The notes under the pieces: generated by a model
Told to the model about the DNA's origin: nothing
Database searches by the model: none
What the model saw: the letters and a program-made list of their open reading frames with translations, nothing else
Part shown: in pieces, positions 17,875 through 49,641 of the stretch
Numbering within the stretch: position 1 is the stretch's first letter
How the letters are laid out: each line of letters begins with the position of its first letter
Virus record (IMG/VR): IMGVR_UViG_3300042558_004148
Span: 62,001-126,000 of that record
DNA: 64,000 bases
Reading direction: 5' to 3' (one strand)
Program-made: the position numbers and the translations under genes

Positions 17875-19599
17875 ATGAACATTTTTAAGAAAAATAACAT
17901 TTTAATAAACGGTCTTCTTGGTGATACGTTTAATTTTTTGCAGGCAACATATAATCAGACAGCAAACGTATTTACTGTTGCTTCAGCTTGGGGACAGATA
18001 TTATTTGTGCTACAAAATCTATCGCAGATGATCCTATATTTTATAGAGGATTCCATAACTGAATTAAACATAGACCAAGCAACTAGGGATTATTCAGTTA
18101 GAAGCTTAGCCAGAATAGCTGGATATGACTCTGGTAGAGCTAGTGCTGCTCAGGGTGAAGTTTCTCTTAAATGGAATACAAGAGAAGGTGGAGTAGGTGG
18201 AGGAGCAGTTATAATAAAAAACAATACACAGATTAGATGTCAGGAAAATGGAAAAACGTATTCTCTTAGGTTTAGTAGTCCTGAAGTAACTATACCTCTT
18301 ACCAGAGGAAATAATCTTAGAGTAAAGCTAGTACAGGGAACTTTTGAAACTGCACTTTTAACTGGGACCGGACAATCACTACAAAGCTATAATTTACCTT
18401 CAACATCAGGAGCTTTCTTGGATCAGTTTTATGTTGATGTTTATGTTAATGAGGAAAAATGGAGAAGATATGATTCGTTATATGACATTCCACTCAACGG
18501 GAAGGGATATCTAGTTAGAACAGGTATACAAGAAGGGCTTGATGTTTATTTTGGTAACTCTAATTTCGGTATGGCTCCACCGAGAGGATCCAGAATAAGA
18601 GTCGAATACCTTAAAACAAATGGAATAAGTGGTAATGCTAATTCAACTAAGGATAATCAGTTAACGTATAGGTTTTCTAATCAGGGTACAGATCTATTCG
18701 GAGCATCAGTTGATCTTAATCTCTATATAGATGTTAATAATGAAATAGATCCAGCATTTGGTAATAATCCTGAATCTCTTAATTTAATAAGACTAGTTGC
18801 ACCTAAAACTTCAAGATCTTTTGTTTTTGCAAATCCTGATAACTACGAGGTATTTTTAAATAAATTAGGAATATTTTCTCAGATACAGGCATTTTCAACA
18901 TTTGATGATGATTACCTTGACGACGATAACGTGGTTTACATATATTTAGTCCCTGACGTTACATTAAATATATCATCTAATGAGGATTATTTTAGTGTTC
19001 CTGTTTCTGACTTCTTTCTAAGTAATGCACAAAAGGCAAGAGTACTTAATCTTATAGAGGATTCTGGTTCTATGATAGCAACAACTGTTGTTAAAATTGT
19101 ACAACCAGTAATAACTAAATTTGTTGGAAATGCTATATTAAGTATATTTGAAGGCTCAGATCCGGAGACAATAAGACAGGCAGTGAGAAAGAAAATTTCA
19201 GATTATATGTTAAATCTGAAAAGAAGAGATAAAATACCAAAATCTGACATAATAGCATTAATAGAATCTGTACCTGGCGTTGATTCGGTTTCTTTCTACT
19301 TTATTGGGCAGGCTAATGAACAGAATCAAATAAACATCCAGGATCTGGATAATGTCTCGCAGGCACAACTGGACGAGGTTATTGGGATGGATCAATTTGG
19401 TGATATAATTATAGGCAGAAATCAATTGATTCTTTTGAGAGGTGGTTGGACAGATAGAAACGGAACATCGTACACAGAGGATTTTGTTGACGGAAAACCA
19501 GGTCCACTCAATGTAACAATAGCATCCATAGTTCCTAAATCTTTTAGAATGGATTTAAACACCTCTATGAAGAGCCAAATAATTAATCAGGGAAGCTAA
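17875..19599 (+). CDS. Baseplate wedge protein, gp6 / baseplate J-like
   Basis: Follows gp25; SLARIAGY-x-S-x-RASAAQG and IRLVAPK motifs; 574 aa. Confidence 0.8.
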   Translation: MNIFKKNNILINGLLGDTFNFLQATYNQTANVFTVASAWGQILFVLQNLSQMILYFIEDSITELNIDQATRDYSVRSLARIAGYDSGRASAAQGEVSLKWNTREGGVGGGAVIIKNNTQIRCQENGKTYSLRFSSPEVTIPLTRGNNLRVKLVQGTFETALLTGTGQSLQSYNLPSTSGAFLDQFYVDVYVNEEKWRRYDSLYDIPLNGKGYLVRTGIQEGLDVYFGNSNFGMAPPRGSRIRVEYLKTNGISGNANSTKDNQLTYRFSNQGTDLFGASVDLNLYIDVNNEIDPAFGNNPESLNLIRLVAPKTSRSFVFANPDNYEVFLNKLGIFSQIQAFSTFDDDYLDDDNVVYIYLVPDVTLNISSNEDYFSVPVSDFFLSNAQKARVLNLIEDSGSMIATTVVKIVQPVITKFVGNAILSIFEGSDPETIRQAVRKKISDYMLNLKRRDKIPKSDIIALIESVPGVDSVSFYFIGQANEQNQINIQDLDNVSQAQLDEVIGMDQFGDIIIGRNQLILLRGGWTDRNGTSYTEDFVDGKPGPLNVTIASIVPKSFRMDLNTSMKSQIINQGS

Positions 19600-20151: not shown

Positions 20152-23100
20152 ATGGCAGATATAAGACTTAAGTTTTTCAATAAGGAGGGTAATCCATTAA
20201 ATTTCGATTATATTGGACCAACCGGAGCTAATCCTTTAGATTCCAAATTTACATACCGTACATCCATATCGGGTGCTAGTAATCCTGGTGATCTTGATAT
20301 CACAGAATTTCCAACATATTATAATTTCTTATTCAATGCTGAGGATCTTAATGCATTTGATATGACCTCATGGTATACTGAAGCTGTTTATTGCTTAGAT
20401 AGAGGTACCGAAATATATCTTGAAGGATCTGTTGCTGGTCAGAATGACTTCAGAGGAAAAATATCAGCTGTTAATCTGTTAGGTAACCAATTAACGATAA
20501 CTATACCTAGTGACTATTATTCTGGACAAAGTATAATCAGTCCAGATAATCAGATATACTTTACCACACCTTATAAAAATAGACCCGGTGGATATTTTAA
20601 GGGAAATATTTATTTTGATCCGGTATCTGCTAATCTATACGAGAACGAGCAAATATTTGTTGTACAGGAATTTTATAACGTAACTACATCACAAATTACA
20701 TATGGACTTCCTCATACCGGCGCAACAGGAGCTACTGCTTCACCACAATGGAGAAGTAGATGGTACAATGATAATTATGGCGAAACTGACGTTTCGGAAA
20801 TAATATTCACTTATTCAATATCTGATCAATTGGATGGTGGTGATGGTGAGCCATTAATAGTTAGCTACCCTAACATGATTTTTGATGTTGATGTTGATCC
20901 TAACGATTTCTATTCTAATGGATACGTCAATACAACAACTTCATCCATTGATTCCAGTGCACTCCCAATAAATGTTGCCTTAAATGGACCAGAGGGTGCG
21001 GAAAATATTTATGAGAGAAAACTTATAATTGATGATATATCAACTGGAACACCAGAGAAAATATTGGAGGTTGATTACTATGGACAAATAATAGGTGAGG
21101 ACGAGAGATTTAAAGTGCTTTTAGCAAATCTGGGGAGATCTTTTTATAATAGTGATTCAGTTATACTTAGAGATCATGATCCTGCAGAACCTTTACCTAA
21201 TTACTTAGAGATAAACGAGAAGAGAAAAGAGCTTATGGTAGCTGGTGAGGAAATATTTCCTTATATTGGTAGTTATAAGGGTCTTATTAATGCTCTTAAG
21301 TTTTTTGGTTATCAGGATCTTAGAATAAAAGAATACTGGTTAAATCTTAAATATAATGGACTAAGAGTAGAATCGCCTATTCAGCAGAATAAGAATTTTT
21401 TAAATGCTATTAATAAACAGCAATCGCAGGGATATAATATGTCATATCAGATTGGTGATATATTGGACAACCCTAATTCTGGTAAATATAAGCTTACTCA
21501 AACCTACGGACCTAATAAAAATGGAGAATATGTTCTGGATGTTACATCGGAGGATACATTAGTACCAAGTAGAACATACAAAAAAACGTCACTATTTGGA
21601 CTTTATTATGATCTTAATAAAGTAACCGGTGAGGAAGACGAATTTAATTTACCGATAGTAGAGGACGCTTTTAAATTCACACAAGAGGAAGTACTTATTA
21701 AAATATTTGCTCTGAAGGAAAGATTGAAGAGGGATTATCTACCATTAAACGCCAGAATTATAGATATAACTGGTGAGGGTATTTATTTTGGTGTATATAA
21801 TACCAAATCCTGGACTGATATAATGGGAAGATCCGATTTTGATTCAGGCTTCGAGTTTGATTTCTATCCTAATCCGGATTTCGGTTTTTTAGAAGATCTA
21901 AGAAACTTTTCCACACGACCATTAGCTGGTGCTATACAAAGTCCTAGTTCATATAATAACAATTATTCTTCAACTGTTCAGTTTCTAGGTGGTACTGGAA
22001 GTGCCATTTATTTTAGTGGAAATCTACCGAATGGATCTACTGGACCTAATCCTATATTAAACCTATACATAGGTCAAACATACGAATTTAGCGTTTCCGA
22101 TACTTCCACCTATGGTTATGATCTTATAATTACAACCGATCCGAATTTAACACAGATAGATCCACTCGGAATAATTAATAATGGTGCAACCGGAGGTAAT
22201 TCAATTACATGGTACGTAGAACCTAGCCAAACTTCACCAGTATATTATTATTCTTCGGTAAATCCTTCATTATTGCTGGGTACTATTAATATACTACCCC
22301 CTATATTATCTGATTTAGGAAACATAGTGAATCCGCTAGATTCACAACAAATTTATAATAGCCAACAGAATCAATCGATGTTAAGTGCTATAGATAATTT
22401 CTATAAGCTTAAGCAGGAGGGGAAAATAATAGAATTGGGTGACGATAAATACGATCCTGTTGCATACATAGATCCAAATACTGGACAGCAGTACGACGTT
22501 CCTATTGGAATGCCAGTAATACTTGAACTATTTCCTGATATTTGGACATGGAACGAACTTAATACTAGCTGGGATTCCATAATGATACCTGCATATCGGG
22601 TAGGCGATAGAGTTGAGGTTCCATCTGTCCCATCATTCGGTACAGTTGTTGGAGTTAGTTACTCGACGGGCCAATATAATGTCCTTCTAGATCCACCTTA
22701 CAACATAACGACACAGTTTGGTGAGATGGAACTATTTGCAACAACCCAGGTATTTTTATTATTAACTTGGAGTAATATAGATTTTTCGAATGCGATGGAG
22801 ATAGAGTGGATAGTCGATAAAACCACCACTCAGTCAGGATCGCCTTATAATTTCAATTTTAGAGGTCCTATAGCGGACTTTTATAAAATGGCACACTTCT
22901 TACCATACAGCGGAGATTATAAGATTACGTGCAATGTATATGATGCCTTTAATGCTAAAAGCACTGTCATTAAGAATTCTATAATCAAGGTTCAACCAAA
23001 AACCATAGATATCGATTCTTGGACTAGATACAGAGAGGTTGAAAATTATATATGGGATAATGTTGATCGAGGATGGGACTCATATAAATCAATATGGGAA

Positions 23101-24912
23101 TATCCTGCAGAGGGAGATAGTATAGAGGTTCTAGAAAAAACAATACCTTCTGAGATTCTGAAATTTGCTACGTATGGGAATAAAGCCGAAGAGGGTCAGA
23201 GTTTATATGTTAAAACTAATCTAGATCCTGTCGGAGCAACCGGTGAGATATTATTATCTCAGAATGTTGTAGCGATAGATGAGATATATTCACTTCAGAT
23301 ATTTACTGGTCAATACGGATCAGCCACGGTATCTACCATAACACCTCATGGACTAAATGATGGTGATGAATTAACAATAATAGGAAGTATACCTGAAATA
23401 GATGGTAGATGGACAGCAAATATAGTTTCCCCTACTGTATTTACTATACCTTCCGTAATTTCAAATTCATGGAACGGTGTTGTTCTCGAGACAACCCCGG
23501 TAAATAGATATGTTATAGATCCAACTATATACACGACACAAAAAATTACTGGAGCTGGTTTAATAAAGGTCTATGTAAATAATAGAGAAATTGGAAGTGC
23601 TGATGCAGGTGACACATTATATCACACTGCAAATGCAATAACTTCTTCGATAAACTCACTAAGAACATACCCGGACTATTTTGCATCTTGTCTGAATCCT
23701 AGTACGGATCCTGTCTCTATTATAATATATGCTCCTGATGAATTAGGAGCCGATCAGAATGGTGTTCCGCTATCTGCTACTGTAACGGGAACATTATCAC
23801 TAAGTTCCATATCTGGAACTCTGGAGAATGGAGTAAGTCCTTCCGAAACATATGTTTATTGGTCTGAAAATTCAGAAATCTACCCCAATGATAATCTAAG
23901 ATTTTGGGGAACTAAAAATCTGGACTGGCAAATATTTAATGAGACTAGCTGGAATGATGGATATGCACATAGCTGGTATGATTTCGAATTTAATAACGAT
24001 TGGTTAGGTGGATATGAATTACATACAATATTACCCGGTGACCACGTCAAAGTAAGTACTGGTAATTCAACATACCCGTTCCCAGTTGGTGTTACATTAA
24101 CCAGTCCTGGAAGTTCGATGACTGTACAAGAAGTTGCTGATCAATTAAATAGTTCTGGCGAAACGCATATAACTAATTTTTACTATAGACCTATACCTAG
24201 CGATACCGGATCATTAAGCACAATAACCGGTCCTATTAATCTGGATCTTACTAATGCGTCGGTCCCTGTTAGTACATACCCAGCTCCGCCTTCACTAATA
24301 GGAGGTAGTAATGTATTGATACCTAATTTCGGTTACACTGGAGGTACTCCTATAACAACAACGTCTACGACAACGACGACAACAATAGCTCCTACCACTA
24401 CGACAACCACGACTACGACAACCACGACGTCGACAACAACAACGACCACAGCGGCACCTACAACGACTACAACAACGACCATAGATCCTTGTTTACTTGC
24501 TGGTAATGCTGTAATGATTTATCCGACTACGACAACCACGACGTCGACAACAACAACAACAACGGTACCCATAGGACAAGTTATTATGAATAATCTAGAT
24601 AATACCGGAACTATTGAGGATGTGCAGGTGAATTCGAATTCTATTCTGGTAAGTCCAGGAACATTCCCGGTATTACCAAACACAACCGGTGTAGGCAGTT
24701 ACGGATACGGGATACCAGGACTTTCCCAGATAGAAGTAAGTGTTGGTGCGGTGACAATGTATACGGCCGTAAATCTATCATTAAGTACTGGATATACAGA
24801 TTGTCTTTTACTTGATCCGTTTGCAGGGTTCGTAGTATTCTCGATGGTAGATTTATCAACAGCACCAACTATAACAATAACACTAGAACAGCAAGGAACC
24901 GCGTGTGCATAA
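20152..24912 (+). CDS. Large baseplate wedge protein, gp7-like, with PKD-like segments and a C-terminal mucin-like Thr tract
   Basis: IGSYKGLINALKFFGY motif typical of gp7/P2 gpI-like wedge proteins; position after gp6; poly-Thr near the C-terminus. Confidence 0.65.
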   Translation: MADIRLKFFNKEGNPLNFDYIGPTGANPLDSKFTYRTSISGASNPGDLDITEFPTYYNFLFNAEDLNAFDMTSWYTEAVYCLDRGTEIYLEGSVAGQNDFRGKISAVNLLGNQLTITIPSDYYSGQSIISPDNQIYFTTPYKNRPGGYFKGNIYFDPVSANLYENEQIFVVQEFYNVTTSQITYGLPHTGATGATASPQWRSRWYNDNYGETDVSEIIFTYSISDQLDGGDGEPLIVSYPNMIFDVDVDPNDFYSNGYVNTTTSSIDSSALPINVALNGPEGAENIYERKLIIDDISTGTPEKILEVDYYGQIIGEDERFKVLLANLGRSFYNSDSVILRDHDPAEPLPNYLEINEKRKELMVAGEEIFPYIGSYKGLINALKFFGYQDLRIKEYWLNLKYNGLRVESPIQQNKNFLNAINKQQSQGYNMSYQIGDILDNPNSGKYKLTQTYGPNKNGEYVLDVTSEDTLVPSRTYKKTSLFGLYYDLNKVTGEEDEFNLPIVEDAFKFTQEEVLIKIFALKERLKRDYLPLNARIIDITGEGIYFGVYNTKSWTDIMGRSDFDSGFEFDFYPNPDFGFLEDLRNFSTRPLAGAIQSPSSYNNNYSSTVQFLGGTGSAIYFSGNLPNGSTGPNPILNLYIGQTYEFSVSDTSTYGYDLIITTDPNLTQIDPLGIINNGATGGNSITWYVEPSQTSPVYYYSSVNPSLLLGTINILPPILSDLGNIVNPLDSQQIYNSQQNQSMLSAIDNFYKLKQEGKIIELGDDKYDPVAYIDPNTGQQYDVPIGMPVILELFPDIWTWNELNTSWDSIMIPAYRVGDRVEVPSVPSFGTVVGVSYSTGQYNVLLDPPYNITTQFGEMELFATTQVFLLLTWSNIDFSNAMEIEWIVDKTTTQSGSPYNFNFRGPIADFYKMAHFLPYSGDYKITCNVYDAFNAKSTVIKNSIIKVQPKTIDIDSWTRYREVENYIWDNVDRGWDSYKSIWEYPAEGDSIEVLEKTIPSEILKFATYGNKAEEGQSLYVKTNLDPVGATGEILLSQNVVAIDEIYSLQIFTGQYGSATVSTITPHGLNDGDELTIIGSIPEIDGRWTANIVSPTVFTIPSVISNSWNGVVLETTPVNRYVIDPTIYTTQKITGAGLIKVYVNNREIGSADAGDTLYHTANAITSSINSLRTYPDYFASCLNPSTDPVSIIIYAPDELGADQNGVPLSATVTGTLSLSSISGTLENGVSPSETYVYWSENSEIYPNDNLRFWGTKNLDWQIFNETSWNDGYAHSWYDFEFNNDWLGGYELHTILPGDHVKVSTGNSTYPFPVGVTLTSPGSSMTVQEVADQLNSSGETHITNFYYRPIPSDTGSLSTITGPINLDLTNASVPVSTYPAPPSLIGGSNVLIPNFGYTGGTPITTTSTTTTTTIAPTTTTTTTTTTTTSTTTTTTAAPTTTTTTTIDPCLLAGNAVMIYPTTTTTTSTTTTTTVPIGQVIMNNLDNTGTIEDVQVNSNSILVSPGTFPVLPNTTGVGSYGYGIPGLSQIEVSVGAVTMYTAVNLSLSTGYTDCLLLDPFAGFVVFSMVDLSTAPTITITLEQQGTACA
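24355..24564 (+). repeat. Poly-Thr (ACN)n coding tract, 46 Thr in 70 codons, with an internal exact 34-bp duplication
   Basis: Translated directly; cgactacgacaaccacgacgtcgacaacaacaac occurs at 24410-24443 and 24524-24557. Confidence 0.95.
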
Positions 24913-24966: not shown

Positions 24967-26166
24967 ATGGCTACAGCTACTATAACTTTAACCACTGCGG
25001 GAACTGGAACAGGACCATTTGATCTGTATTCCGATTTTGATGGATATGTTACCCCATTTGAAACTGGTGTTGATAAATCATTATTGGTTTCTGGATATAC
25101 AACATCATTGGTTTATAATGGAACAACTATAATTAGGGTTCAGTCCACAAGTATACAGTGTACAAATTATATAGATTTGTCAGTATCAGGTATAACTACC
25201 ACAACCACGACATCAACATCAACAACAACAACGACAACAACTCCTCCGGTGCTATGTGTATGTTATACAGTGGTTTATACTGGACCCCCTCCACCTCCAC
25301 AATTTTATACTGGTACAACGGATTACTCATATATTGATTGTTCGGGACTTACCGTGAATACAATAGTATCAGAAGGTTACCCCGTTGATGTTTGTGCTCA
25401 AGAAAACAGTATTATAATAACCGGTGGTGACGAACTCGCTGGCTGGGACGTGTCACTGTTTAATTGCTGTACTAGTAATCCAATGGATCTTAGTTATGGT
25501 GTAAATATTAGCACAGTTTGTAACAATCCGCAGCTTGTGTCTGTTTGTGCTGATACAAATGATATATGTACCGCAACAGTATTGACAGATTCTGATTTTA
25601 ACCAGAATTGTCTTACTACACCTGCATCTGCAGGATATTATGGAGATGGAACAAACTATAGATATTGGGATGGATCAACATTTACTACCGGATGTACTCT
25701 TTGTACTGGATGTTTAGTTGCTGACACATTAATAACATTATCTAACGGGACAACTAAATTGATACAGGATATACAGGTTGGCGATGTATTGAAATCCCTT
25801 GATGTGGCAGGAATGCCTCTGGCACCGGATCAATGGTATCATTGGAGCAGTGATATATTGGATTACATAAATTCCACATCAACTGTGATCGGTGTATCAA
25901 TCCATGAATTTGATTCCGTAATAAACATTAATAACGGTAAATTAATTGCAACCTACACCCATAACCACGTAGTTAAGCAAAATGACGTATGGTACATTAG
26001 AACAACATTCGAATTGAATGTTGGTGATGTGTTATTGGATATAGATAACAACGAATTTGAAATTACCTCATTGGTTGTTGTAAATGCACCAATAACTGTA
26101 TATGATATTGATGTGAATAACAGTAATTTATATTTTGCAAATGATACATTAACTCATAACAAATAA
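24967..26166 (+). CDS. Thr-rich, Cys-rich putative virion protein with a C-terminal Hint domain
   Basis: Thr tract at 25195-25242, PPPPP and a Cys-rich middle; Hint from CLVADTLI (25711) to VYDIDV...FANDTLTHNK-stop. Confidence 0.85.
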   Translation: MATATITLTTAGTGTGPFDLYSDFDGYVTPFETGVDKSLLVSGYTTSLVYNGTTIIRVQSTSIQCTNYIDLSVSGITTTTTTSTSTTTTTTTPPVLCVCYTVVYTGPPPPPQFYTGTTDYSYIDCSGLTVNTIVSEGYPVDVCAQENSIIITGGDELAGWDVSLFNCCTSNPMDLSYGVNISTVCNNPQLVSVCADTNDICTATVLTDSDFNQNCLTTPASAGYYGDGTNYRYWDGSTFTTGCTLCTGCLVADTLITLSNGTTKLIQDIQVGDVLKSLDVAGMPLAPDQWYHWSSDILDYINSTSTVIGVSIHEFDSVININNGKLIATYTHNHVVKQNDVWYIRTTFELNVGDVLLDIDNNEFEITSLVVVNAPITVYDIDVNNSNLYFANDTLTHNK

Positions 26167-26223
26167 TAAATTACATGATGGAATTTATTACTATTAGGAG
26201 AGTATAATTATAAAAATTTGGGT

Positions 26224-27192
26224 ATGATAAACAAAAAAATAACCTTTATTTGCGCACAGCCGGATGTGCCTTATTTTCATTGGCAAGTGGAGGTACTAAT
26301 CCATAATTTTATGAAAAGTGGAATAAATCCCAATTGGATAGAAATTCTATTTGCCTATGATGAGTCAATATCACCAGAGGGATCTGAGTTGGCTAAAAAA
26401 TACCCATACGTTAGATTTTTTTTCTACAAGAAAACTCCGGTTGAAAACTACGGATATATTCCAATTTTAAGACCGGATATATTGGAACAGCATTTTCTTA
26501 AATATCCTGGTCTTTCAGATGATAATATATTCTATCATGATTCTGATATCATCTTTAGAGAACTTCCTGACTTTAATTCATTGATTAATGATGATGTCTG
26601 GTATCTAAGTGACACGGTTTCCTATATAGGATCAGATTATATTAAAAGTAAATCCGAGCAAATTTTGGAAGATATGTGTGACATAGCTGGAGTTTCCAGG
26701 GATCTTGTTGAAGCTAACAATCCAAATTCAGGAGGTGCGCAATATCTTATGAAAAATATAGATCACCTATTCTGGAGGGACGTTAAATACGTTGCTCTCA
26801 ATCTGTATAAATATATGCTTGATGCTGAGGTGGAGGAGAGGAAAACTCTATCTGAAGAGCAGTTATCTTCTTACAACCCAATACAGAAATGGTGCGCAGA
26901 TATGTGGGCGGTATTATGGTGTGGACTTAAAAGGGGAAGTCAGGTTAGATTATCTGATGAACTTGGATTTAGCTGGGGATCTAGCTGGGGGCAAACAGAA
27001 TGGAATAAACATAAAATATTACACAATGCCGGAGTTACAGATAATGGGAACGGGAAGATGTTTTATAAAGGAGATTATATAAATAATTCTCCTTGGGAAG
27101 CTGATCTATCCACAATAAGTCCCGATGCCAATTCTTATAATTATGTACAGGCCATATTATATGCTAAAGAAATGAGATCTAAACTGCATTGA
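26224..27192 (+). CDS. GT-A glycosyltransferase resembling plant peptidyl-serine alpha-galactosyltransferase / Hyp O-arabinosyltransferase (GT96/GT95-like)
   Basis: YFHWQVEVLIHNFMKSG, HDSDIIFR (DxD), GGAQYLM and KWCADMWAV align in order with SERGT1 motifs recalled as YFDWQTVGLMHSFLKSG, LDADMIIR, VGGLLAM and GWISEMYGY. An alternative TTG start lies at 26218. Confidence 0.75.
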   Translation: MINKKITFICAQPDVPYFHWQVEVLIHNFMKSGINPNWIEILFAYDESISPEGSELAKKYPYVRFFFYKKTPVENYGYIPILRPDILEQHFLKYPGLSDDNIFYHDSDIIFRELPDFNSLINDDVWYLSDTVSYIGSDYIKSKSEQILEDMCDIAGVSRDLVEANNPNSGGAQYLMKNIDHLFWRDVKYVALNLYKYMLDAEVEERKTLSEEQLSSYNPIQKWCADMWAVLWCGLKRGSQVRLSDELGFSWGSSWGQTEWNKHKILHNAGVTDNGNGKMFYKGDYINNSPWEADLSTISPDANSYNYVQAILYAKEMRSKLH

Positions 27193-27218: not shown

Positions 27219-28970
27219 ATGGCAGACGTAATACTAGGTATAGAACAGGGGGACATCATTTATTACTATGATACGAGCATAGGTGATGTTGTGCAAAGAG
27301 ATTGGAGTTTCCAAGGTGGAACACCAACCGGTGCTACATCCTATGGACCCGCAGTAACTTATAATGGTGTCAATACAAATGGATATTCCACATCTTTAAC
27401 TGTGACCGACGCAGCAACCGTTGTTGCTACAACTACCAAGAATAATATAATCGTTGTAACTCCGGAAAATATATCTGCCGCAGTAACCGCATCTAATGTT
27501 AATGTTTTAATGGACGATACAGTTTATTATGGTTCTTCAGCTACAGCGGGAAGTGGATTGACCGGATACGTGTGGAGCATACCTGGTCTTGGTGCAACAT
27601 CGGGAATATATTTAAGTAATGTAACATATGCAAACTTGGATTGGTATAATCTGGCTAATACTTACGTAGGCTCTGTTAATTCAGCATATGTTGCTACCGC
27701 TACTTTAACTGTTACTAGTAATGTGGGTAACGTGGTAAACTCAAGTACGAATGTTACATTCTATAAAATGGGACCTGCTGAGGGATTCTATTATAATGAC
27801 TTATATGGGGCAACTGCTAGTGGACCTTATTATACACCATCAGTAACAGCATACACTTCTAATGATATAGGTCTTGGTGGATCTGGTTTAGTTATAAAGA
27901 TTGATCAAGCATCCAGTTTATATGCACCTATAAATAATTTATATTCACATTCAACTGACGAGGTTGCATATTATTTGCCAAATAGTTCCGATGTATATAC
28001 TAGTATGGATCCGATTAGACTTAGATTAATAATAAACAAGAACGCGTTTATTATTATGGGAGCTGGCGTTAATCCTAATTCACAATTTAGTACAGGTAGC
28101 TATATATTAGCTGGAGGTATAAACACCACCCTGCAAGATAATTTATATCTAACTGATTATACGACAACGGGAACATCCTTAACTTTCTATAATTTAAAAA
28201 CATCAAGGGGATGGACAAACGGGGCCATTAATAAATTTTTGGAGAATAAGTATTATTTATCTGCATCATCCAAGCATGCTGATGGTATATCGTATCTTGT
28301 AGCAAATACTGAGATGTACTTATCATCATATTATAGCATAGATTGGACTGGTGGATATACAATAACCCTTGGTACTAGGCCTGGTGTAGCTATACCTTCA
28401 TCCAGGTTATTTTTCACTAAGTTCGGCGTTGTAATAAATGTTAATGTTAATGTTAATGTTTATAGAGAAGGAAGTGATAACCTAATAGGCTCATATAACG
28501 TTGTGATAAGTTCCGGTGGCGGTGGAGGTATTGGAAATAGTCCCGATACTCTTTTAATAACAGCGAATGATGCAGGATATGGATCTGGTTCAGGTTTAGC
28601 CAGTATATTTAATTCAACAACATCTTCAACAACATTTGCCAATAATATATTATTCGAGGCATCAAGATTCTATTGTCCATTCGAGAATGTAACGGATACT
28701 CCCATCTTTCAGGGAATTGCAGTTCATATAACTGATCCTTTACATTCGGCAACCGGACTTTATATAGGCAGAGTGGAAATAGTATGGGATGCTTCATATC
28801 TATCTGACGTAAATGGTCTAGGACTAACGTCCGGCCCATTAACATACCCATTTGCAAGTGACACCGGTAGTTCATTTACCGGTATGAGGTTAAAAGTTGG
28901 ATATCCCAATAATGCAGTAAATCATACTAATTATAAAAAGGGATGGGAAATAGGCGGATCAATAGCATAA
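27219..28970 (+). CDS. PKD-domain (Ig-like) putative virion/fibre protein
   Basis: RDWSFQGGTPTGATSYGPAVTY...YSTSLTVTD is a classic PKD pattern; a second PKD-like unit follows (YVWSIPG...TATLTVTS). Confidence 0.7.
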   Translation: MADVILGIEQGDIIYYYDTSIGDVVQRDWSFQGGTPTGATSYGPAVTYNGVNTNGYSTSLTVTDAATVVATTTKNNIIVVTPENISAAVTASNVNVLMDDTVYYGSSATAGSGLTGYVWSIPGLGATSGIYLSNVTYANLDWYNLANTYVGSVNSAYVATATLTVTSNVGNVVNSSTNVTFYKMGPAEGFYYNDLYGATASGPYYTPSVTAYTSNDIGLGGSGLVIKIDQASSLYAPINNLYSHSTDEVAYYLPNSSDVYTSMDPIRLRLIINKNAFIIMGAGVNPNSQFSTGSYILAGGINTTLQDNLYLTDYTTTGTSLTFYNLKTSRGWTNGAINKFLENKYYLSASSKHADGISYLVANTEMYLSSYYSIDWTGGYTITLGTRPGVAIPSSRLFFTKFGVVINVNVNVNVYREGSDNLIGSYNVVISSGGGGGIGNSPDTLLITANDAGYGSGSGLASIFNSTTSSTTFANNILFEASRFYCPFENVTDTPIFQGIAVHITDPLHSATGLYIGRVEIVWDASYLSDVNGLGLTSGPLTYPFASDTGSSFTGMRLKVGYPNNAVNHTNYKKGWEIGGSIA

Positions 28971-28984
28971 TTAAAAAGATATAA

Positions 28985-31900
28985 ATGGCAAGTTACGGAA
29001 TTAGCATAAATCAAATAGATACGGACAGCGATTTCTTCGTATGGGCATCTGGGCAGGATCTTAGAAGATTCAATGGATCATCTTGGGAGTATTACAATTA
29101 CCAAAATTCTGCTGTTCCTAGTTCAATACCATATTTTCTAGATACTAGATCTATATCTATAGATCCTTATGATAAAGTATGGACTGGTGTTGCGGAAGGG
29201 CCTATTCCTGGATTAAATGAGGTTGCTGTATTCTATATAAATTCGGATAATATCGAAATTGGCGAAAACTGGAATTTTTCTGATCTTGGTACTTTTAACG
29301 AGCCACAGGAAATATCAACCATATGTGCTTGTAGATATGGCGATTATGTACATGCTTTTTCAACCCCGCTTAATGGTATAGGCGGTACAGGAGCTACTGG
29401 ATATACTGAGATTAATGGGGTTACTGGAGGTAGACTTTTCTGTTATCAGACTAAGATCGATAATTGGTTTGAAGTTGTACCTGGATACACCTGGCCTCAT
29501 GTATATGACGTAAAGTCCAAGGGAATTGATGGTAAGGATTATTTTTATTATATCGCCACAGCGGAAGGACTATTTGCTGTTCCCCAGGGTGAATTGGAAG
29601 CAACTGAATTAATTGGGGGAGAGCTTATAATAGAACAGGCTAGGGTTTATAATACAAAAACCAGCGGCATTATATCTGATTATGTATATTCATTGGATAG
29701 GGATGAGAATGATAATATCTGGATTGGTACATCTCTGGGATTATCTTTCTTTGATGGTGATCAATTTTGGAATTATCCTACTCCCGGCCCGGTTACGAGA
29801 GTTATATCAAGACCAAATGGGCATGTATTCTATTCGCTTGGTGATGGTGAACTTGGACAGGGAAGTGGTCTATGGCATTTTAATGGTACCGTACACACAC
29901 AATTCGATTCTAGCAATTCAAATATACCAAATGATAATGTACTTGATATTAAATTAGTTGGTAAAAACGTAACCCAAGAGGACCTAACAATATATGATAA
30001 CTCATTATGGGTTTTATGCTTAAACGAGATTGTTTCGTTTAATTATGATATTCCTCATGTATATGGATCTTCTAAATATGAGGGAGCAACTGGATGGAAT
30101 TTTACATATTTTACAGCTACTGGTGGAACTGCACCTTTGGCTAAGGTTGATAAGTACACATGGGTTTATCCGGAATGGAGAATATATGATGATTATTATA
30201 CATCATTGAAATTTCCTGGTATGGATCCTAGAAATCTATTTCTTACAACTAAGCTAAGCGACATAGCTAATGGTAAAGCTGGTGAGCAGAAATATTGGGA
30301 CAATTATCCAATACCGACTTATGAGGATTCAGTATTGAGTGAATCAATATCCGCTCCATCGTGGATATCTGATATTCAGCTTAATCAATTAGGGGTTACT
30401 GCTGGAACTGTCCAGATAACATCATCAACCACGATAAAAACGGAGGATGGTATAAAATATTATATTGGAGGATATCTGAAGGGAAATGTTAGTGTGGACC
30501 TTGGTTATTACGACGAAACAGAACTAGCAACTTTAACCAATCAAAACCCTACGATAGGTGGGATTTCAGATACTTCATTGATAGGGGGTTCTTCTTTAGA
30601 TAACGGAGAGATGGGTTTTATAGCATCGTATAACGAGTCTGGATTTGTCGATTCAGTATTACCATTTAGAGGATACCGAACAAGAATACAGGACATAAAG
30701 GCATCTGAGGATGGTGATTATATAGTTGCTTCCGGAATTTTTAATAGATTCATTGAAAGTGGACCATATGTATGGGATTCACTAGAGACGGAGAATTCTT
30801 ATAGAAATGGTCCAATTGGTGCACCAGCGGGTGTTACTAATATAAATGTTCCTGGTGTTACTGGTGGAGACTATCCCTGGATATATGGATCAACCGGAGA
30901 TATTTTTAATAGCACATGGAATTATACATATGGAGCAAATCCCCCTGGATCTGGAATTTTTTCGGTAGATGTTGAGAGTGGGAGTTCTTATTCCTGGGAG
31001 AATATAACCAAGATAAGAATAAATTACGTTGATACGGTCCCATCTTCCCGACCATTAGGAGATATTATGACATCGAATACCATACGTTTGAGACCATCCG
31101 GATCCGCTGCCAACTATAGAGTTAATTCGGTTACTGTGCTAAATCTAAATTCGATAGAATTCAACGTTACCTATGATTATAATGCATCCGGTACTACGGG
31201 TCTTTTCCTTTTCACTAATTCAACGCCATTCAGAATATATTTTTATGAATATACCGACACCTCATATCCATTGGTACAAAATGTTAATTCTAGAGGGACC
31301 TATTGGAATAATAATGACGTTTCTGCAAATTCGATATTCGTTGCTAAAATTGGCAGGGATTTGGGTAACACATCAACCTTTACTGATCTTGGTATAAATG
31401 GTACATTTTCTCGTGACGTTAGAACCTCTTATAGGGGATTGGATTTCAGAAATTTTCCAGCTAAATATGAACAAAATATAAATTCAGGTGATATTAAGAA
31501 CTCCAATGTATCGTTGAGTAGATATTCCATAAATCTTGGTCTTGAATCAGGAATATACTTTACTCCAAATTCATCGACTGGAGATCTATCGACTCTTAAA
31601 AATGCATGGAATAGAACTAATGATTACCCGGAAACATCAGATATTATATTAGGGTCTACACAGGAGATATCACAGAATTGGCTTAGCGATTCTGTGATAT
31701 CTTATGTGAGATTATCGTCTGATAATCTTTCCCTATTGACTACATCCACCTCCAACAGCATATACCCTGGTGTAGGTCCAACCTCGGCGAATAGAAAAAT
31801 ATCTGATATAAAATCTCTTCCGGATAACAATACTGTTTTAATAACTGGTAACTCAGATCAGAATTTTAATTTTGGTGGAATTGGACTTACTGGAATAAAT

Positions 31901-33052
31901 TCTGTGTATATCCCATATTATATAATATTAAATAGCGACGGTACCGGGGTAACTGGTGGATTCATAGGTGGAGCCACTGGATATAGACAATATCCTAAAG
32001 CATCAAATGACGAATCTACGTATTACGTAACAACTAATTTTGGTGGATCTGGTAGCTATTTTGGTAATGATTATGTAGCAGGTACGACGGGTAATTATTT
32101 ACTAACTGCTAGAATAACTGAGCAGGGGGTTCCAATTTCAACCGATGTAGTTTATAGTGGATTTGAATCTAACTTCATACAGCTGCTAAATTCGGAGAAT
32201 CTTTCGAATGGTCAGTATTTTATAGCTTATTCCGAACTCTCATTTGCATCTGATGATAATATCTTTATGATAAAAAGTAACGGAAAGAATAAGATCCTTG
32301 ATAGTGTTTCGATGGATGCTGATTATAAAAACAATTTAATACCCGTTAATCAAAAAAGCGATAGCATATCATTTTCTGTGGACCAGTCAGATAATATATT
32401 TCTTACCGGATTTAATTACGGAGCAACTGGAGCTAGCGGATATTATAATATAGGATCTACATCAGGGGTTTCGTTATTATCACCACAATATAATCCTAAT
32501 CTGGGTATAAATCTTGGTAATATTATATCGAGAGCTGGTTCTGGAGCTTGGACCTGGTGTGATGTACATTCGACAGATAAGGGAATGCAAATACCACTTC
32601 TTTCGACAGTTATATTTAGCAACTATGCATCTAATATTTACGGAAAACAAAACAATAACTGGATACTTAGCGATGCAATAACAGGAAATGAATTGCTTAA
32701 TGTTAAAGCAACTCCATATTTCATATACACATTTAGCGAAGTTGGTAAATATACCATATACAATAGCGTAGAAGATTCAGCAGGTAATGTTTATTTTGTA
32801 ACCAAACCTGGATATATTGAAATTATAGATCATAAGGCGAAAAGACCTGATGATAATAATCCAGATATAGTTGATTCTTTTGATTATGGTGAACCTGAAC
32901 CTTTTGCTGGTAGAGACTATGAGGCTGCTAAATTAGCCAAGGATATGGAGAAACAGCAACAGGAAATTTTCGATGTTAATAATTCTAACCAAAGTTTTGG
33001 TACTGGTATCGTTATAGAGAATAATCCGGATGCGACATTTAGAAATGAATAA
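28985..33052 (+). CDS. Large beta-propeller (two-component-regulator-propeller-like) putative virion protein with a C-terminal PKD-like domain
   Basis: TSGIISDYVYSLDRDENDNIWIGTSLGLSFFDG and SNSNIPNDNVLDI blades; YTFSEVGKYTIYNSVED PKD-like end. Confidence 0.7.
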   Translation: MASYGISINQIDTDSDFFVWASGQDLRRFNGSSWEYYNYQNSAVPSSIPYFLDTRSISIDPYDKVWTGVAEGPIPGLNEVAVFYINSDNIEIGENWNFSDLGTFNEPQEISTICACRYGDYVHAFSTPLNGIGGTGATGYTEINGVTGGRLFCYQTKIDNWFEVVPGYTWPHVYDVKSKGIDGKDYFYYIATAEGLFAVPQGELEATELIGGELIIEQARVYNTKTSGIISDYVYSLDRDENDNIWIGTSLGLSFFDGDQFWNYPTPGPVTRVISRPNGHVFYSLGDGELGQGSGLWHFNGTVHTQFDSSNSNIPNDNVLDIKLVGKNVTQEDLTIYDNSLWVLCLNEIVSFNYDIPHVYGSSKYEGATGWNFTYFTATGGTAPLAKVDKYTWVYPEWRIYDDYYTSLKFPGMDPRNLFLTTKLSDIANGKAGEQKYWDNYPIPTYEDSVLSESISAPSWISDIQLNQLGVTAGTVQITSSTTIKTEDGIKYYIGGYLKGNVSVDLGYYDETELATLTNQNPTIGGISDTSLIGGSSLDNGEMGFIASYNESGFVDSVLPFRGYRTRIQDIKASEDGDYIVASGIFNRFIESGPYVWDSLETENSYRNGPIGAPAGVTNINVPGVTGGDYPWIYGSTGDIFNSTWNYTYGANPPGSGIFSVDVESGSSYSWENITKIRINYVDTVPSSRPLGDIMTSNTIRLRPSGSAANYRVNSVTVLNLNSIEFNVTYDYNASGTTGLFLFTNSTPFRIYFYEYTDTSYPLVQNVNSRGTYWNNNDVSANSIFVAKIGRDLGNTSTFTDLGINGTFSRDVRTSYRGLDFRNFPAKYEQNINSGDIKNSNVSLSRYSINLGLESGIYFTPNSSTGDLSTLKNAWNRTNDYPETSDIILGSTQEISQNWLSDSVISYVRLSSDNLSLLTTSTSNSIYPGVGPTSANRKISDIKSLPDNNTVLITGNSDQNFNFGGIGLTGINSVYIPYYIILNSDGTGVTGGFIGGATGYRQYPKASNDESTYYVTTNFGGSGSYFGNDYVAGTTGNYLLTARITEQGVPISTDVVYSGFESNFIQLLNSENLSNGQYFIAYSELSFASDDNIFMIKSNGKNKILDSVSMDADYKNNLIPVNQKSDSISFSVDQSDNIFLTGFNYGATGASGYYNIGSTSGVSLLSPQYNPNLGINLGNIISRAGSGAWTWCDVHSTDKGMQIPLLSTVIFSNYASNIYGKQNNNWILSDAITGNELLNVKATPYFIYTFSEVGKYTIYNSVEDSAGNVYFVTKPGYIEIIDHKAKRPDDNNPDIVDSFDYGEPEPFAGRDYEAAKLAKDMEKQQQEIFDVNNSNQSFGTGIVIENNPDATFRNE

Positions 33053-47968: not shown

Positions 47969-49639
47969 ATGACAGAGTTACAGTTACTTAGAATAGAAGA
48001 AGGGGATTCTCAGAATAATATAATTGATAAAATTAATTATAATTTTACCGGTATAATTGACTTCGGTGGAGGCCCTTATGGAAAGATAGGTAAAATTGGA
48101 CCTGATGGAAATAAGGGAGCTACTGGCCCGGTGGGTTCATACGGGGATCTCGGAAGGAGAGGTAGTATATGGAACATTGGTCCGACACAACCCCAAGGAA
48201 ATAACGTATATTTATCAGATTATTGGATGAACACTGATGAATTTAATAATATATACGAGTTCAACGGAAATTCTTGGGCATTGAGTGGCATAAACGTAAG
48301 ATCCAGGGATTTATTTTATGTTGATGGTCCAGTAATAACATCATCGGGCAACAGTACTAAAAGGGGTTATTACATATCATCTTCTCTTCCCTTAAGTTAT
48401 ACAACAGTAATTAGTGACGTCCAGATAACAAGTGGATCAAGCACCAGTTCCCCTAATGCGATACCAAATCCGCAGTATAGTAAATTCGTTATATCCACCG
48501 ATGGACTTAATCCGAATAAGAATATACTGGAGTTTAGTAAACACCAGTATTCTTCGAATTTAGCATTTACACAAAAAACACCCAGATTTTATTGGACTCA
48601 GGGAGCGACATCAGCAAGAGGAAATTATGGACTTAGCTTGCTTAGTGGATATAGATTCGATATAAACACTTCTTCCGATTTATATATTGCTTCCATTTCG
48701 TCAGGTATTAATTTAACCTCAACTGGAATCAATATGACAACGCCTAGTACTTTACCATTCGGTATAAATGCAACATCGAGAATTACATTTAATTTTTCGA
48801 CAGGTTCAGCCATATTCTCGACCAGTAATATAAGTTTCTCAGGTGGATTATTTTCTTTTAAAACCCCGATATATTCTTCTACCCAAAGTAATAGTGTTAT
48901 TCCAACGATGAGGTTGGCTTCAGCGTCGGCTAATACTGGAAATATTAGATATGTTTATCCATCCACTGGAACTAAGCTAATAAATCTATTTAGAAGTGTT
49001 CAATCTGGATCTATTATAAACTATGTAGATGGGTCTGGATTATTTTATTTTAATAAAAGAGTTAATTCCATACAGAATGCACAATCTGTAACTGCAACAA
49101 CGACATCGGTAGTTGCAGGAACACAGATAGATTGGGTTACAGTTCTTCCCTCTATCTCATTAACGTCAACCGGCAATTATGTATGGTCGAATAATGGAAT
49201 GGATTTAGTTGTAACAAAACCAACATCTACTGCAAACCAGAGAGGATTATGTTTATGGACTCCTGCCACTGGTGGAGCACCTGGTGGAAATGGTGGGTGG
49301 CTAAAATTATTGGAAAATGGTGAATCGATAAACTTTAGAGTTCATAGTGGCAATTCAGGAACTTCTAGTACCGATAATTTTAAATTCATTGGACTAAATA
49401 CTTCAAATAATCAGGGAGATGCACCTAATAATACACCATCTTCAAACTATTCATTTATTAATTTATCTGCATCTAATGGGGTTGGAGCATCTACAATAGA
49501 CATAACAATAGTTAATATACAAGGAACCGGATCAACTGCGGGTAACAGAAGATGGTTCAAAGTATATTATTCAGCATGGGGAGGTGGATTAACAACAAAC
49601 CAATGTGGTGTACTAACAACATATAATGCAACAGCCTAA
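47969..49639 (+). CDS. Collagen-repeat tail fibre paralog B
   Basis: GDSQNNIIDKINYNF followed by 11 G-X-Y triplets ending at Trp. Confidence 0.75.
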   Translation: MTELQLLRIEEGDSQNNIIDKINYNFTGIIDFGGGPYGKIGKIGPDGNKGATGPVGSYGDLGRRGSIWNIGPTQPQGNNVYLSDYWMNTDEFNNIYEFNGNSWALSGINVRSRDLFYVDGPVITSSGNSTKRGYYISSSLPLSYTTVISDVQITSGSSTSSPNAIPNPQYSKFVISTDGLNPNKNILEFSKHQYSSNLAFTQKTPRFYWTQGATSARGNYGLSLLSGYRFDINTSSDLYIASISSGINLTSTGINMTTPSTLPFGINATSRITFNFSTGSAIFSTSNISFSGGLFSFKTPIYSSTQSNSVIPTMRLASASANTGNIRYVYPSTGTKLINLFRSVQSGSIINYVDGSGLFYFNKRVNSIQNAQSVTATTTSVVAGTQIDWVTVLPSISLTSTGNYVWSNNGMDLVVTKPTSTANQRGLCLWTPATGGAPGGNGGWLKLLENGESINFRVHSGNSGTSSTDNFKFIGLNTSNNQGDAPNNTPSSNYSFINLSASNGVGASTIDITIVNIQGTGSTAGNRRWFKVYYSAWGGGLTTNQCGVLTTYNATA

Positions 49640-49641
49640 AT

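What the first reader, a model, noticed from the sequence alone, without database searches (positions are those of the whole stretch)
26224..27192. GT96/GT95-like (plant SERGT1/HPAT) glycosyltransferase in a bacteriophage
Seen: YFHWQVEVLIHNFMKSG-x2-P, YIPILRP, HDSDIIFR, SYIG, GGAQYLM, KWCADMWAV-x8-RLSDEL and a C-terminal ILHNAG. From my recollection of Arabidopsis SERGT1, the corresponding blocks are YFDWQTVGLMHSFLKSG-x-P, YPAINKP, LDADMIIR, GYLVG, VGGLLAM and GWISEMYGY-x8-KINDDL, collinear across the domain. There is no signal peptide or transmembrane anchor, so it would act in the host cytoplasm. These families are characterised mainly in plants and algae, so a phage member would bear on the origin of eukaryotic protein O-glycosylation.
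Basis: partly seen in the sequence, partly recalled or inferred. Interest (0 to 1): 0.8.

Follow-up and report, generated by a model that had tools for sequence, protein, structure and literature searches.

The report
Phage enzyme that likely sugar-coats poly-threonine tails
This jumbo-phage gene encodes a soluble glycosyltransferase from a large, unannotated phage family whose predicted fold is closest to plant SERGT1/HPAT enzymes, and which almost always sits next to virion proteins carrying poly-threonine tracts, so it most likely attaches sugars to the phage's own particle proteins.

Summary
The ORF (window 26224-27192, +, 322 aa) is real and every quoted motif is present. One spacer is 11 residues, not 8, and ILHNAG is 52 residues from the end.

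It belongs to PHROG 4417 ('unknown function'). The family has no Pfam, NCBIfam or PDB sequence match, yet it has over 2,000 homologues and about 1,000 clusters at 50% identity.

AlphaFold models (pLDDT 90 and 96) give a GT-A fold with an invariant DxD (D106/D108) and a conserved H267 and K282. The best named structural matches are Arabidopsis SERGT1 and algal HPAT-domain proteins. These rank above GT8, GT24 and GT6. Pfam HPAT itself does not match, so it is a structural relative and not a demonstrated GT95/GT96 member.

The new result concerns the likely substrate.
- In the 218-kb genome, the only two poly-Ser/Thr proteins are the two genes directly upstream.
- In 80 related loci the upstream gene has such a tract in 62, against 5 of 376 downstream genes.
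- In Gram-positive siphophages the tracts are C-terminal tails of capsid and tail-tube proteins.
- Relatives that lack the enzyme lack those tails.

Best reading: a cytoplasmic, probably retaining, protein O-glycosyltransferase for virion proteins. No glycan has been shown.

The parts
26224..27192 (+). Glycosyltransferase gene (322 aa; alternative TTG start at 26218). Member of PHROG 4417, GT-A fold.
26539..26547 (+). DxD motif (D106-S-D108), invariant in 150 family representatives. Inferred site for metal and nucleotide-sugar binding.
26725..26745 (+). NSGGAQY block (aa 168-174). G171 and Q173 are invariant. Inferred sugar-donor pocket.
26884..26907 (+). QKWCADMW block (aa 221-228). Q221, W223, M227 and W228 are invariant or nearly so.
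27022..27069 (+). H267-N-A-G ... F280-x-K282. Conserved C-terminal His and Lys, inferred third metal ligand and diphosphate contact, as in retaining GT-A enzymes.
24967..26166 (+). Gene immediately upstream (399 aa). Candidate acceptor protein with a poly-Thr/Ser tract at aa 74-94 and a C-terminal Hint-like domain.
25186..25248 (+). Poly-Thr/Ser tract SGITTTTTTSTSTTTTTTTPP of the 399-aa protein.
20152..24912 (+). Second gene upstream (1586 aa, baseplate/fibre module). Candidate acceptor with three poly-Thr tracts near its C-terminus.
24346..24570 (+). Poly-Thr/Ser tracts (aa 1399-1473) that link the body of the 1586-aa protein to a C-terminal domain of about 110 aa.
17875..19599 (+). Context: gp6-like baseplate wedge gene (phrog_219, E 4e-33). 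It places the locus in the late structural module.

Best explanation
The gene encodes a soluble, cytoplasmic, metal-dependent GT-A glycosyltransferase, probably retaining. It most likely O-glycosylates the threonine/serine-rich tracts of the phage's own virion proteins before or during assembly. Here the candidate acceptors are the 399-aa and 1586-aa baseplate/fibre-module proteins encoded directly upstream. In small siphophages the same family would decorate C-terminal poly-Thr tails on the major capsid and tail-tube proteins. Shown: the gene, the fold, the conserved DxD/His/Lys set, the structural kinship, and the gene-to-tract association and co-variation. Inferred: the acceptor, the retaining mechanism, the roles of individual residues, and the biological effect. 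That effect could be a glycan brush that stiffens or protects linkers and coats the particle. The donor sugar is unknown. UDP-Gal is a weak guess, based on the SERGT1 resemblance and a phage GalE gene.
For: Fold and catalytic set. The AF2 models have pLDDT 90.4 and 96.0. D106, D108, G171, Q173, F249, F280 and K282 are invariant, and H267 nearly so, in 150 representatives. The nearest solved structures are all retaining GT-A enzymes, several of which act on proteins: glycogenin Z 14.5, Skp1 alpha-galactosyltransferase 14.2, UGGT 14.2, LgtC 13.6, GlyE 13.2. The nearest named predicted structures are SERGT1 and HPAT-domain proteins.

Acceptor link.
(1) In the whole 218-kb genome only two ORFs have poly-S/T tracts (at least 10 of 12 residues). 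They are the two genes directly upstream of this one.
(2) In 82 loci with homologues of 43-100% identity, the gene at position -1 has a tract in 62 of 80. The figure is 15 of 76 at -2 and 5 of 376 at +1 to +8 (Fisher p about 1e-53). After dereplication at 80% identity it is 32 of 44 clusters. With tracts masked, the -1 proteins fall into 18 unrelated BLAST clusters, 11 of which carry tracts.
(3) Homologues of 30-42% identity in cultured phages show the same pattern. Tracts are found on phiFL2B capsid gp43 and tail-tube gp48 C-termini, the VPE25 major tail protein, R9.1, Staphylococcus RQ1, phiCTP1 gp18 and gp11, and Chryseobacterium MA9V-3. In phiFL2B and R9.1 these are the only Thr6 runs in the genome.
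(4) Co-variation: phiFL2B and R3.3 carry the gene and have poly-T tails on both capsid and tail tube. Five relatives without it (50-60% identical tail tube; phiJL-1 and ATCC8014 share a genus with R3.3) have none.
(5) Reverse test: of 55 viral loci picked only for a Thr8+ ORF with downstream sequence available, 8 have this family's gene, always directly downstream. Among 23 other downstream neighbours only one has any recognised GT domain.

Other support. The gene lies in late structural modules. Family members are fused to further GT domains, a methyltransferase, or radical-SAM/SPASM domains. A bacterial PqqD-plus-HPAT cluster is a close structural neighbour. Both point to peptide substrates and multi-step glycans. 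Phage-encoded glycosylation of capsid and tail-tube C-termini is established in mycobacteriophages (Freeman et al. 2023, as cited in PMC12619734, and PMC10877033).
Against: No glycan, activity or donor has been demonstrated for any member. The held literature had no experimental report on this family. About a quarter of related loci have no tract at position -1. Many loci are related phages, so counts are not fully independent, and the co-variation test has only 2 phages with the gene and 5 without. Poly-Thr tracts could be plain flexible linkers that travel with the gene for another reason. Residue roles were inferred by analogy and were not checked on coordinates. The phage's GalE lies about 126 kb from the gene.
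Confidence: 0.68

Rival explanations
1. A GT8-like enzyme that modifies a host envelope glycan (LPS, teichoic acid or capsule), for example for superinfection exclusion or receptor masking. It would have no protein acceptor.
For: The fold is shared with GT8 LPS and polysaccharide transferases such as LgtC and WaaO. Some carriers are temperate phages.
Against: The gene sits inside late structural operons, not in moron or lysogeny regions. It occurs in lytic and jumbo phages. It has no membrane segment. This reading explains neither the adjacency to poly-Thr tracts nor the co-variation with them.
Confidence: 0.1
2. A true GT95/GT96 member acquired recently from algae or plants, with the same donor (UDP-Gal or UDP-Araf) and extensin-like acceptors.
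For: SERGT1 and algal HPAT-domain proteins are the best named structural matches. The ESM atlas lists sister viral clusters in which 10-19% of members carry PF23452.
Against: PF23452 does not match this protein, its genome, or nearly any family member. Identity is about 16%. The family is large and spread over phages of Bacillota and Bacteroidota and over aquatic jumbo phages. That pattern argues for an old phage/bacterial family, not a recent eukaryotic import. No hydroxyproline pathway is evident.
Confidence: 0.07
3. A DNA glycosyltransferase that hypermodifies phage DNA.
For: Phages encode many DNA glycosyltransferases. This genome has ThyA and a weak second thymidylate-synthase-like ORF.
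Against: The known DNA enzymes are GT-B (T4, RB69, DLP3) or JGT/TarP-like GT-A enzymes placed next to base-modification genes. This gene is never in such a setting in the loci examined. It also occurs in 36-44-kb temperate siphophages between tail genes. The thymidylate-synthase genes lie more than 70 kb away.
Confidence: 0.03
4. A glycogenin-like self-glycosylating or small-molecule glycosyltransferase. In this reading the neighbouring poly-Thr tracts are unmodified linkers.
For: Glycogenin is the top solved-structure match (Z 14.5). A minority of loci lack an adjacent tract.
Against: The Z-scores for glycogenin, UGGT, the Skp1 galactosyltransferase and LgtC are nearly equal, so they indicate fold class only. 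The co-variation of enzyme and tails would be left unexplained.
Confidence: 0.1

Closest known systems
Arabidopsis SERGT1/SGT1, peptidyl serine alpha-galactosyltransferase (CAZy GT96)
   Same: Best reviewed-UniProt structural match (E 5.5e-11, TM 0.60 over residues 4-321). GT-A domain. Acts on hydroxy-amino acids in extended, repetitive, low-complexity peptide tracts (PMC4908140). That parallels the poly-Thr/Ser tracts inferred here.
   Different: About 16% identity, with no sequence-profile link. SERGT1 is 802 aa and resides in the ER/Golgi membrane, and it needs Hyp in its acceptor. The phage protein is 322 aa, soluble and cytoplasmic, and its inferred acceptors are poly-Thr. Donor and linkage are unknown.
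HPAT1-3, hydroxyproline O-arabinosyltransferases (GT95; Pfam PF23452 HPAT)
   Same: Algal HPAT-domain clusters are the nearest named structural neighbours of two independent family models (TM 0.72-0.74; TM 0.58-0.61). GT95 is described as related to GT8 and GT96.
   Different: PF23452 does not reach significance for this protein or family. HPATs are Golgi type II membrane proteins that use UDP-Araf on Hyp.
Retaining GT-A enzymes GT8/GT24/GT77 (glycogenin, LgtC, GlyE, UGGT, Skp1 alpha-GalT)
   Same: Same fold class, Z 13-14.5 over 213-250 residues. DxD plus a downstream His/Lys pattern. Several of them glycosylate proteins.
   Different: 7-14% identity. No Pfam GT8 match. They rank below SERGT1/HPAT-like models.
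Mycobacteriophage virion glycosylation (Freeman et al. 2023)
   Same: Phage-encoded glycosyltransferases in or near structural genes, with glycans at the C-termini of capsid and tail-tube subunits. This is the position of the poly-Thr tails in the siphophage carriers here.
   Different: No Mycobacterium phage appears among the 77 phage records with a homologue, so the enzyme family appears to be different. Hosts are Bacillota, Bacteroidota and unknown aquatic bacteria. In the jumbo phage the tracts are internal linkers of fibre/baseplate-module proteins.
Mucin-type and serine-rich-repeat protein O-glycosylation
   Same: Dense Ser/Thr repeats as acceptors. One initiating transferase followed by elongating ones. 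Family members fused to GT6, GT2 or GT32 domains fit this scheme.
   Different: Analogy only. The initiating enzymes there belong to other families (GT27; the GtfA/B GT-B pair).

Membership tests
CAZy GT95/GT96 (Pfam PF23452 HPAT) | Significant sequence or profile match to the family model | tested here: not met
   No PF23452 hit for the protein at E<=10 or for its genome in six frames. 2 of 58 diverse members hit, best E 0.046. 0 of 7 cultured-phage homologues hit.
CAZy GT95/GT96 (Pfam PF23452 HPAT) | GT-A catalytic domain with DxD, structurally closest to SERGT1/HPAT | tested here: met
   SERGT1 is the top match in reviewed UniProt models. HPAT-domain proteins rank above GT8. HPAT/ShK clusters score TM 0.74 and 0.72 for two models. 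The DxD is invariant.
CAZy GT95/GT96 (Pfam PF23452 HPAT) | Membrane-anchored ER/Golgi enzyme | tested here: not met
   No hydrophobic segment (maximum KD19 0.67). The plant enzymes are membrane proteins.
CAZy GT95/GT96 (Pfam PF23452 HPAT) | Transfers Gal to Ser or Araf to Hyp of extensin-type peptides | not testable with these tools
   Only indirect evidence exists: association with poly-Thr/Ser tracts.
CAZy GT95/GT96 (Pfam PF23452 HPAT) | Profile-profile homology and phylogenetic placement with eukaryotic members | not tested
   No SERGT1 or HPAT sequence could be retrieved. PF23452 was absent from the 802 prokaryotic genomes sampled.
GT8 (Pfam PF01501) | Match to the Glyco_transf_8 profile | tested here: not met
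   No PF01501 hit. The family profile finds no GT8 chain in PDB sequences.
GT8 (Pfam PF01501) | Retaining GT-A fold with DxD and a C-terminal His metal ligand | tested here: inconclusive
   Fold similarity Z 13-14.5 and conserved D106/D108/H267. Residue geometry was not inspected and the stereochemistry is unknown.
PHROG 4417 | Full-length match to the family profile | tested here: met
   E 9.4e-66, residues 7-314 against profile positions 2-291 of 293. The family is labelled 'unknown function'.
Phage virion-glycosylation systems (mycobacteriophage type) | Glycosyltransferase gene within the structural module, next to its acceptor genes | tested here: met
   Adjacency statistics.
Phage virion-glycosylation systems (mycobacteriophage type) | Acceptor sites at C-termini of capsid and tail-tube subunits | tested here: inconclusive
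   Poly-Thr C-tails are present and co-vary with the gene in siphophage carriers. In the window the tracts are internal. Glycans have not been shown.
Phage virion-glycosylation systems (mycobacteriophage type) | Glycan detected on virion proteins | not testable with these tools
   Needs mass spectrometry or glycan staining.

The most novel reading that the evidence does not exclude
A large, unannotated phage glycosyltransferase family is the prokaryotic-virus sister of the plant/algal GT95/GT96 (HPAT/SERGT1) enzymes. It performs mucin-like O-glycosylation of poly-threonine tracts on capsids, tail tubes and fibres across many unrelated phage lineages: Gram-positive siphophages, Bacteroidota phages and aquatic jumbo phages. 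Virion glycosylation would then be widespread in phages rather than an actinobacteriophage peculiarity. The eukaryotic peptide O-glycosyltransferases of this type would descend from a bacterial/phage peptide-glycosylating superfamily.
Probability: 0.35. Interest if true: 0.85.

Novelty: new variant of a known kind. Interest (0 to 1): 0.7.

Why it matters
Phage-encoded glycosylation of virion proteins has been shown only for some actinobacteriophages, where it affects immune recognition. If this family does the same job, glycosylated particles would be common. Carriers include Enterococcus, Staphylococcus, Lactobacillus, Lactococcus and Clostridium phages that matter for therapy and fermentation. 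Environmental jumbo phages carry the gene too. That bears on phage stability, adsorption, antibody recognition and clearance. It would also give a simple sequence rule, a poly-Thr tail plus this gene, for predicting glycosylated virion proteins. A soluble enzyme that glycosylates a short transplantable tag in the bacterial cytoplasm would be a useful glyco-engineering tool. Finally, it would provide a prokaryotic-virus relative for the poorly understood plant GT95/GT96 enzymes, for which the PDB fold searches returned no solved structure.

Tried and rejected
1. Sequence annotation found nothing informative. Pfam, NCBIfam and PDB-sequence searches of the protein and of family profiles gave no real match. 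The only PDB 'hits' were TAL-effector repeats matching the NSGG block, which are spurious.

2. I tried to obtain true HPAT/SERGT1 sequences for a profile-profile test. PF23452 was not found in the window's genome, in two MAGs, or in 401 plus 401 sampled genomes of two phyla. The exhaustive profile search lists only its best 150 hits, all family members, so its tail was not visible. The test could not be run.

I did not send them by another route. The second model was built from permitted representatives instead.

4. The DNA-arabinosyltransferase idea was rejected. The RB69/DLP3 enzymes are GT-B, and the GT-A enzymes associated with 5mYOX are JGT/TarP-like.

5. Eight of the nine literature searches, those on virion/phage glycosylation and poly-Thr acceptors, found no paper on this family; the ninth was on the plant GT95/GT96 enzymes. 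Freeman 2023 and Saito 2014 are not held, so both are cited second-hand.

6. Other glycosyltransferase families downstream of poly-Thr ORFs: only one GT2 among 23 neighbours. The association is specific to this family in that sample.

Full report
**The observation**

The window holds one ORF at 26218..27192 on the + strand. Homologues start at the ATG at 26224, which gives 322 aa. There are two small corrections. The spacer between KWCADMWAV and RLSDEL is 11 residues, not 8. ILHNAG lies at residues 265-270 of 322, so it is not at the extreme C-terminus.

The protein has no hydrophobic segment; the maximum 19-residue Kyte-Doolittle mean is 0.67.

The setting is a phage. The window is part of a 217.9-kb IMG/VR virus record estimated to be 79% complete. 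The identical gene lies on viral contigs of 343 kb and 373 kb. The neighbourhood is a baseplate and tail-fibre module: a gp6-like wedge gene at 17875-19599 and fibre-like genes at 47969-51753.

**What sequence searches say**

The protein matches PHROG 4417, which is labelled 'unknown function', over its full length (E 9e-66). Nothing matches in Pfam, NCBIfam or PDB sequences. The family is nevertheless large:
- 2,117 homologues in the 90%-clustered collection, and the 120 listed carry no precomputed Pfam domain.
- 1,009 clusters at 50% identity, 580 of them at E<=1e-30.
- 77 cultured-phage records, all below 60% identity, from Enterococcus, Lactobacillus, Staphylococcus, Lactococcus, Clostridium and Chryseobacterium phages. 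In the 40 listed the gene is mostly a 'hypothetical protein' (also 'prophage pi2 protein 34', Orf45, and in phiFL2B 'major tail protein').

Across 150 representatives, D106, D108, G171, Q173, F249, F280 and K282 are invariant and H267 is nearly so.

Many members are fusions of 500-1,160 aa. The partner domains are GT6, GT2, GT32-type, methyltransferase or radical-SAM/SPASM.

**Fold and nearest relatives**

An AlphaFold2 model of the window protein has mean pLDDT 90.4. A second model, of a distant representative (P0202, the closest representative to the Gram-positive phage type), has pLDDT 96.0. Both are GT-A folds.

The comparisons with predicted structures agree with one another:
- Reviewed UniProt models: the top hit is Arabidopsis peptidyl serine alpha-galactosyltransferase SERGT1 (E 5.5e-11, TM 0.60, 16% identity, query residues 4-321). 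GT8 and GT24 proteins follow at E 6e-9 to 1e-6 with TM 0.41-0.53.
- AlphaFold DB clusters: after three family members come a nucleotide-diphospho-sugar transferase, an unnamed 590-aa protein (17% identity), and three 'hydroxyproline O-arabinosyltransferase-like domain' algal or protist proteins (TM 0.58-0.61). GT8 entries score 0.45-0.52.
- ESM Atlas: the best named non-family clusters are chlorophyte HPAT/ShK proteins. A bacterial PqqD-plus-HPAT cluster scores 0.73 for the second model.

Among solved structures the best matches are retaining GT-A enzymes with nearly equal scores: glycogenin Z 14.5, Skp1 alpha-galactosyltransferase 14.2, UGGT 14.2, LgtC 13.6 and GlyE 13.2.

Family membership is not. 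Pfam HPAT (PF23452) finds nothing in the protein or its genome. It hits 2 of 58 diverse members at a best E of 0.046, and none of 7 cultured-phage homologues. I could not obtain a SERGT1 or HPAT sequence for a profile-profile test. That test remains the decisive missing computation.

**The likely substrate**

This is the main new result. Scanning all ORFs of the 218-kb genome for poly-Ser/Thr tracts (at least 10 of 12 residues) returns exactly two proteins. They are the two genes immediately upstream of the glycosyltransferase:
- The 399-aa protein (24967-26166), with a tract at residues 74-94.
- The 1586-aa protein (20152-24912), with three tracts at residues 1399-1473.

The pattern is general. 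In 82 viral or genomic loci with homologues of 43-100% identity:

| Gene position relative to the GT | Genes with a poly-S/T tract |
|---|---|
| -1 | 62 of 80 |
| -2 | 15 of 76 |
| +1 to +8 | 5 of 376 |

Fisher's exact test gives p of about 1e-53. After dereplication at 80% identity, 32 of 44 clusters keep the pattern. With the tracts masked, the upstream proteins fall into 18 clusters that BLAST does not relate. Eleven of these carry tracts, so this is not a single conserved gene pair.

**Independent lineages**

In Gram-positive siphophages the homologue (30-35% identity) lies directly after the tail-tube or capsid gene. The tracts there are C-terminal tails:
- phiFL2B: capsid gp43 and tail-tube gp48.
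- VPE25: major tail protein.
- R9.1: both the capsid-like and the tail-tube-like proteins.
- phiCTP1: tail tube gp18 and head protein gp11.
- Staphylococcus RQ1: the tail-tube region.
- Chryseobacterium MA9V-3: the genes at -1 and -3.

In phiFL2B and R9.1 these are the only runs of six Thr codons in the whole genome.

The enzyme and the tails also co-vary. phiFL2B and Lacticaseibacillus phage R3.3 carry the gene and have poly-Thr tails on both capsid and tail tube. Five relatives have 50-60% identical tail-tube proteins but lack the gene: two Streptococcus Javan prophages, a group B Streptococcus phage, and phiJL-1 and ATCC8014 from the same genus as R3.3. All five end without such tails.

The reverse test agrees. 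Of 118 viral loci selected only for ten consecutive ACN codons, 76 have an in-frame Thr8+ ORF and 55 of those have downstream sequence. Eight of the 55 carry this family's gene, each time immediately downstream on the same strand. Among 23 other downstream neighbours only one has any recognised glycosyltransferase domain.

**Mechanism proposed**

The enzyme is a cytoplasmic, metal-dependent GT-A transferase. By analogy with the retaining GT-A enzymes it resembles, D106/D108 and H267 would hold the metal and K282 the diphosphate; this is inferred, not inspected on coordinates. It would transfer a sugar to the hydroxyls of Thr/Ser in extended tracts of virion proteins late in infection.

Because all close structural relatives are retaining enzymes, an alpha-linked first sugar is predicted. 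The donor is unknown. The genome encodes a GalE UDP-glucose 4-epimerase (404 bits), which fits a galactose donor only loosely. Fusions of family members to further glycosyltransferase and methyltransferase domains suggest that in some phages the first sugar is extended.

The biological role is inferred. Possibilities are a glycan brush that stiffens and protects linker tracts, or a coat on capsid and tail. The mycobacteriophage precedent is of this kind: glycans at the C-termini of capsid and tail-tube subunits.

**Rivals**

- Modification of host surface glycans is disfavoured by the structural-operon position, the lack of a membrane segment, and the co-variation with tails.
- DNA glycosylation is disfavoured. 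The known DNA enzymes belong to other families and lie next to base-modification genes. Small temperate siphophages also carry this gene between tail genes.
- A recent import of a true GT95/GT96 gene from algae is disfavoured by the missing profile match and by the breadth of the family in phages.

**Limits and novelty**

No experiment on any member was found in the held literature. Glycans, donor, linkage and residue roles are all inferred. About a quarter of related loci lack an adjacent tract. The co-variation sample is small.

Phage virion glycosylation is a known kind of system. The enzyme family, its structural kinship to plant SERGT1/HPAT, and the poly-Thr acceptor rule appear to be undescribed. 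I rate it a new variant of a known kind, with interest 0.7.

Noticed in passing
window 25705-26166 (C-terminal part of the 399-aa ORF at 24967-26166): The poly-Thr protein ends in a Hint/intein-like domain. Three related Pfam models match collinearly below threshold: PT-HINT E 0.0025, Hint 0.004, Intein_splicing 0.022. The domain starts at 'GC|LVADTLITLSNGT' and ends 'THNK*' with no C-extein. This suggests self-cleavage of a virion protein, as in hedgehog-type autoprocessing.
   Followed up: partly
own genome outside the window: L092:1-2511 (-), about G000:C1:204-206.5 kb: A protein of at least 837 aa with a domain matching the Aah/TibC autotransporter protein O-heptosyltransferase model above its cut-off (TIGR04414, 274 bits). 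It also has GT4 and FkbM methyltransferase regions. This is a second candidate protein glycosyltransferase in the same phage.
   Followed up: partly
own genome outside the window: L093:1273-2295 (-); L091:610-1884 (-): The phage encodes GalE UDP-glucose 4-epimerase (TIGR01179, 404 bits). It also encodes a GT2-domain protein with a weak resemblance to SunS peptide S-glycosyltransferase.
   Followed up: partly
L087:4662-4900 (Enterococcus phage VPE25) and L089:4560-4931 (Staphylococcus phage RQ1): Poly-Thr coding sequence lies in a different reading frame that overlaps the end of the capsid-like gene (VPE25, unannotated) or of the major tail protein gene (RQ1, whose protein already ends STTTTTTTP). 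These are candidate programmed frameshifts that would give only a fraction of subunits a long poly-Thr tail.
   Followed up: partly
L002:5001-5909 (Enterococcus phage phiFL2B gp49): The GenBank record calls the glycosyltransferase homologue 'major tail protein'. The real tail-tube protein is gp48, which is homologous to SPP1 gp17.1. This is a likely mis-annotation, shifted by one gene.
   Followed up: yes
P0127, P0125 (family representatives); ESM Atlas clusters: Some family members are fused to radical-SAM/SPASM or methyltransferase domains. A bacterial cluster combines a PqqD (peptide-recognition) domain with an HPAT domain. These hint at glycosylation of ribosomal peptide natural products by the same fold.
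   Followed up: no
own genome outside the window: L094 (ThyA, 406 aa) and L095:1318-2097 (-) (259 aa): The genome has a full thymidylate synthase and a second, very weak thymidylate-synthase-like ORF (E 4e-5 in Pfam, 5e-6 in NCBIfam, below cut-off). The function of the second ORF is unknown.
   Followed up: no
window 27219-28970 and 28985-33052: The two large ORFs downstream of the glycosyltransferase (583 and 1355 aa) have no Pfam or PHROG match (583 aa: both libraries; 1355 aa: PHROGs only) and no poly-Thr tracts. They are probably further fibre or baseplate proteins of a very divergent phage.
   Followed up: no
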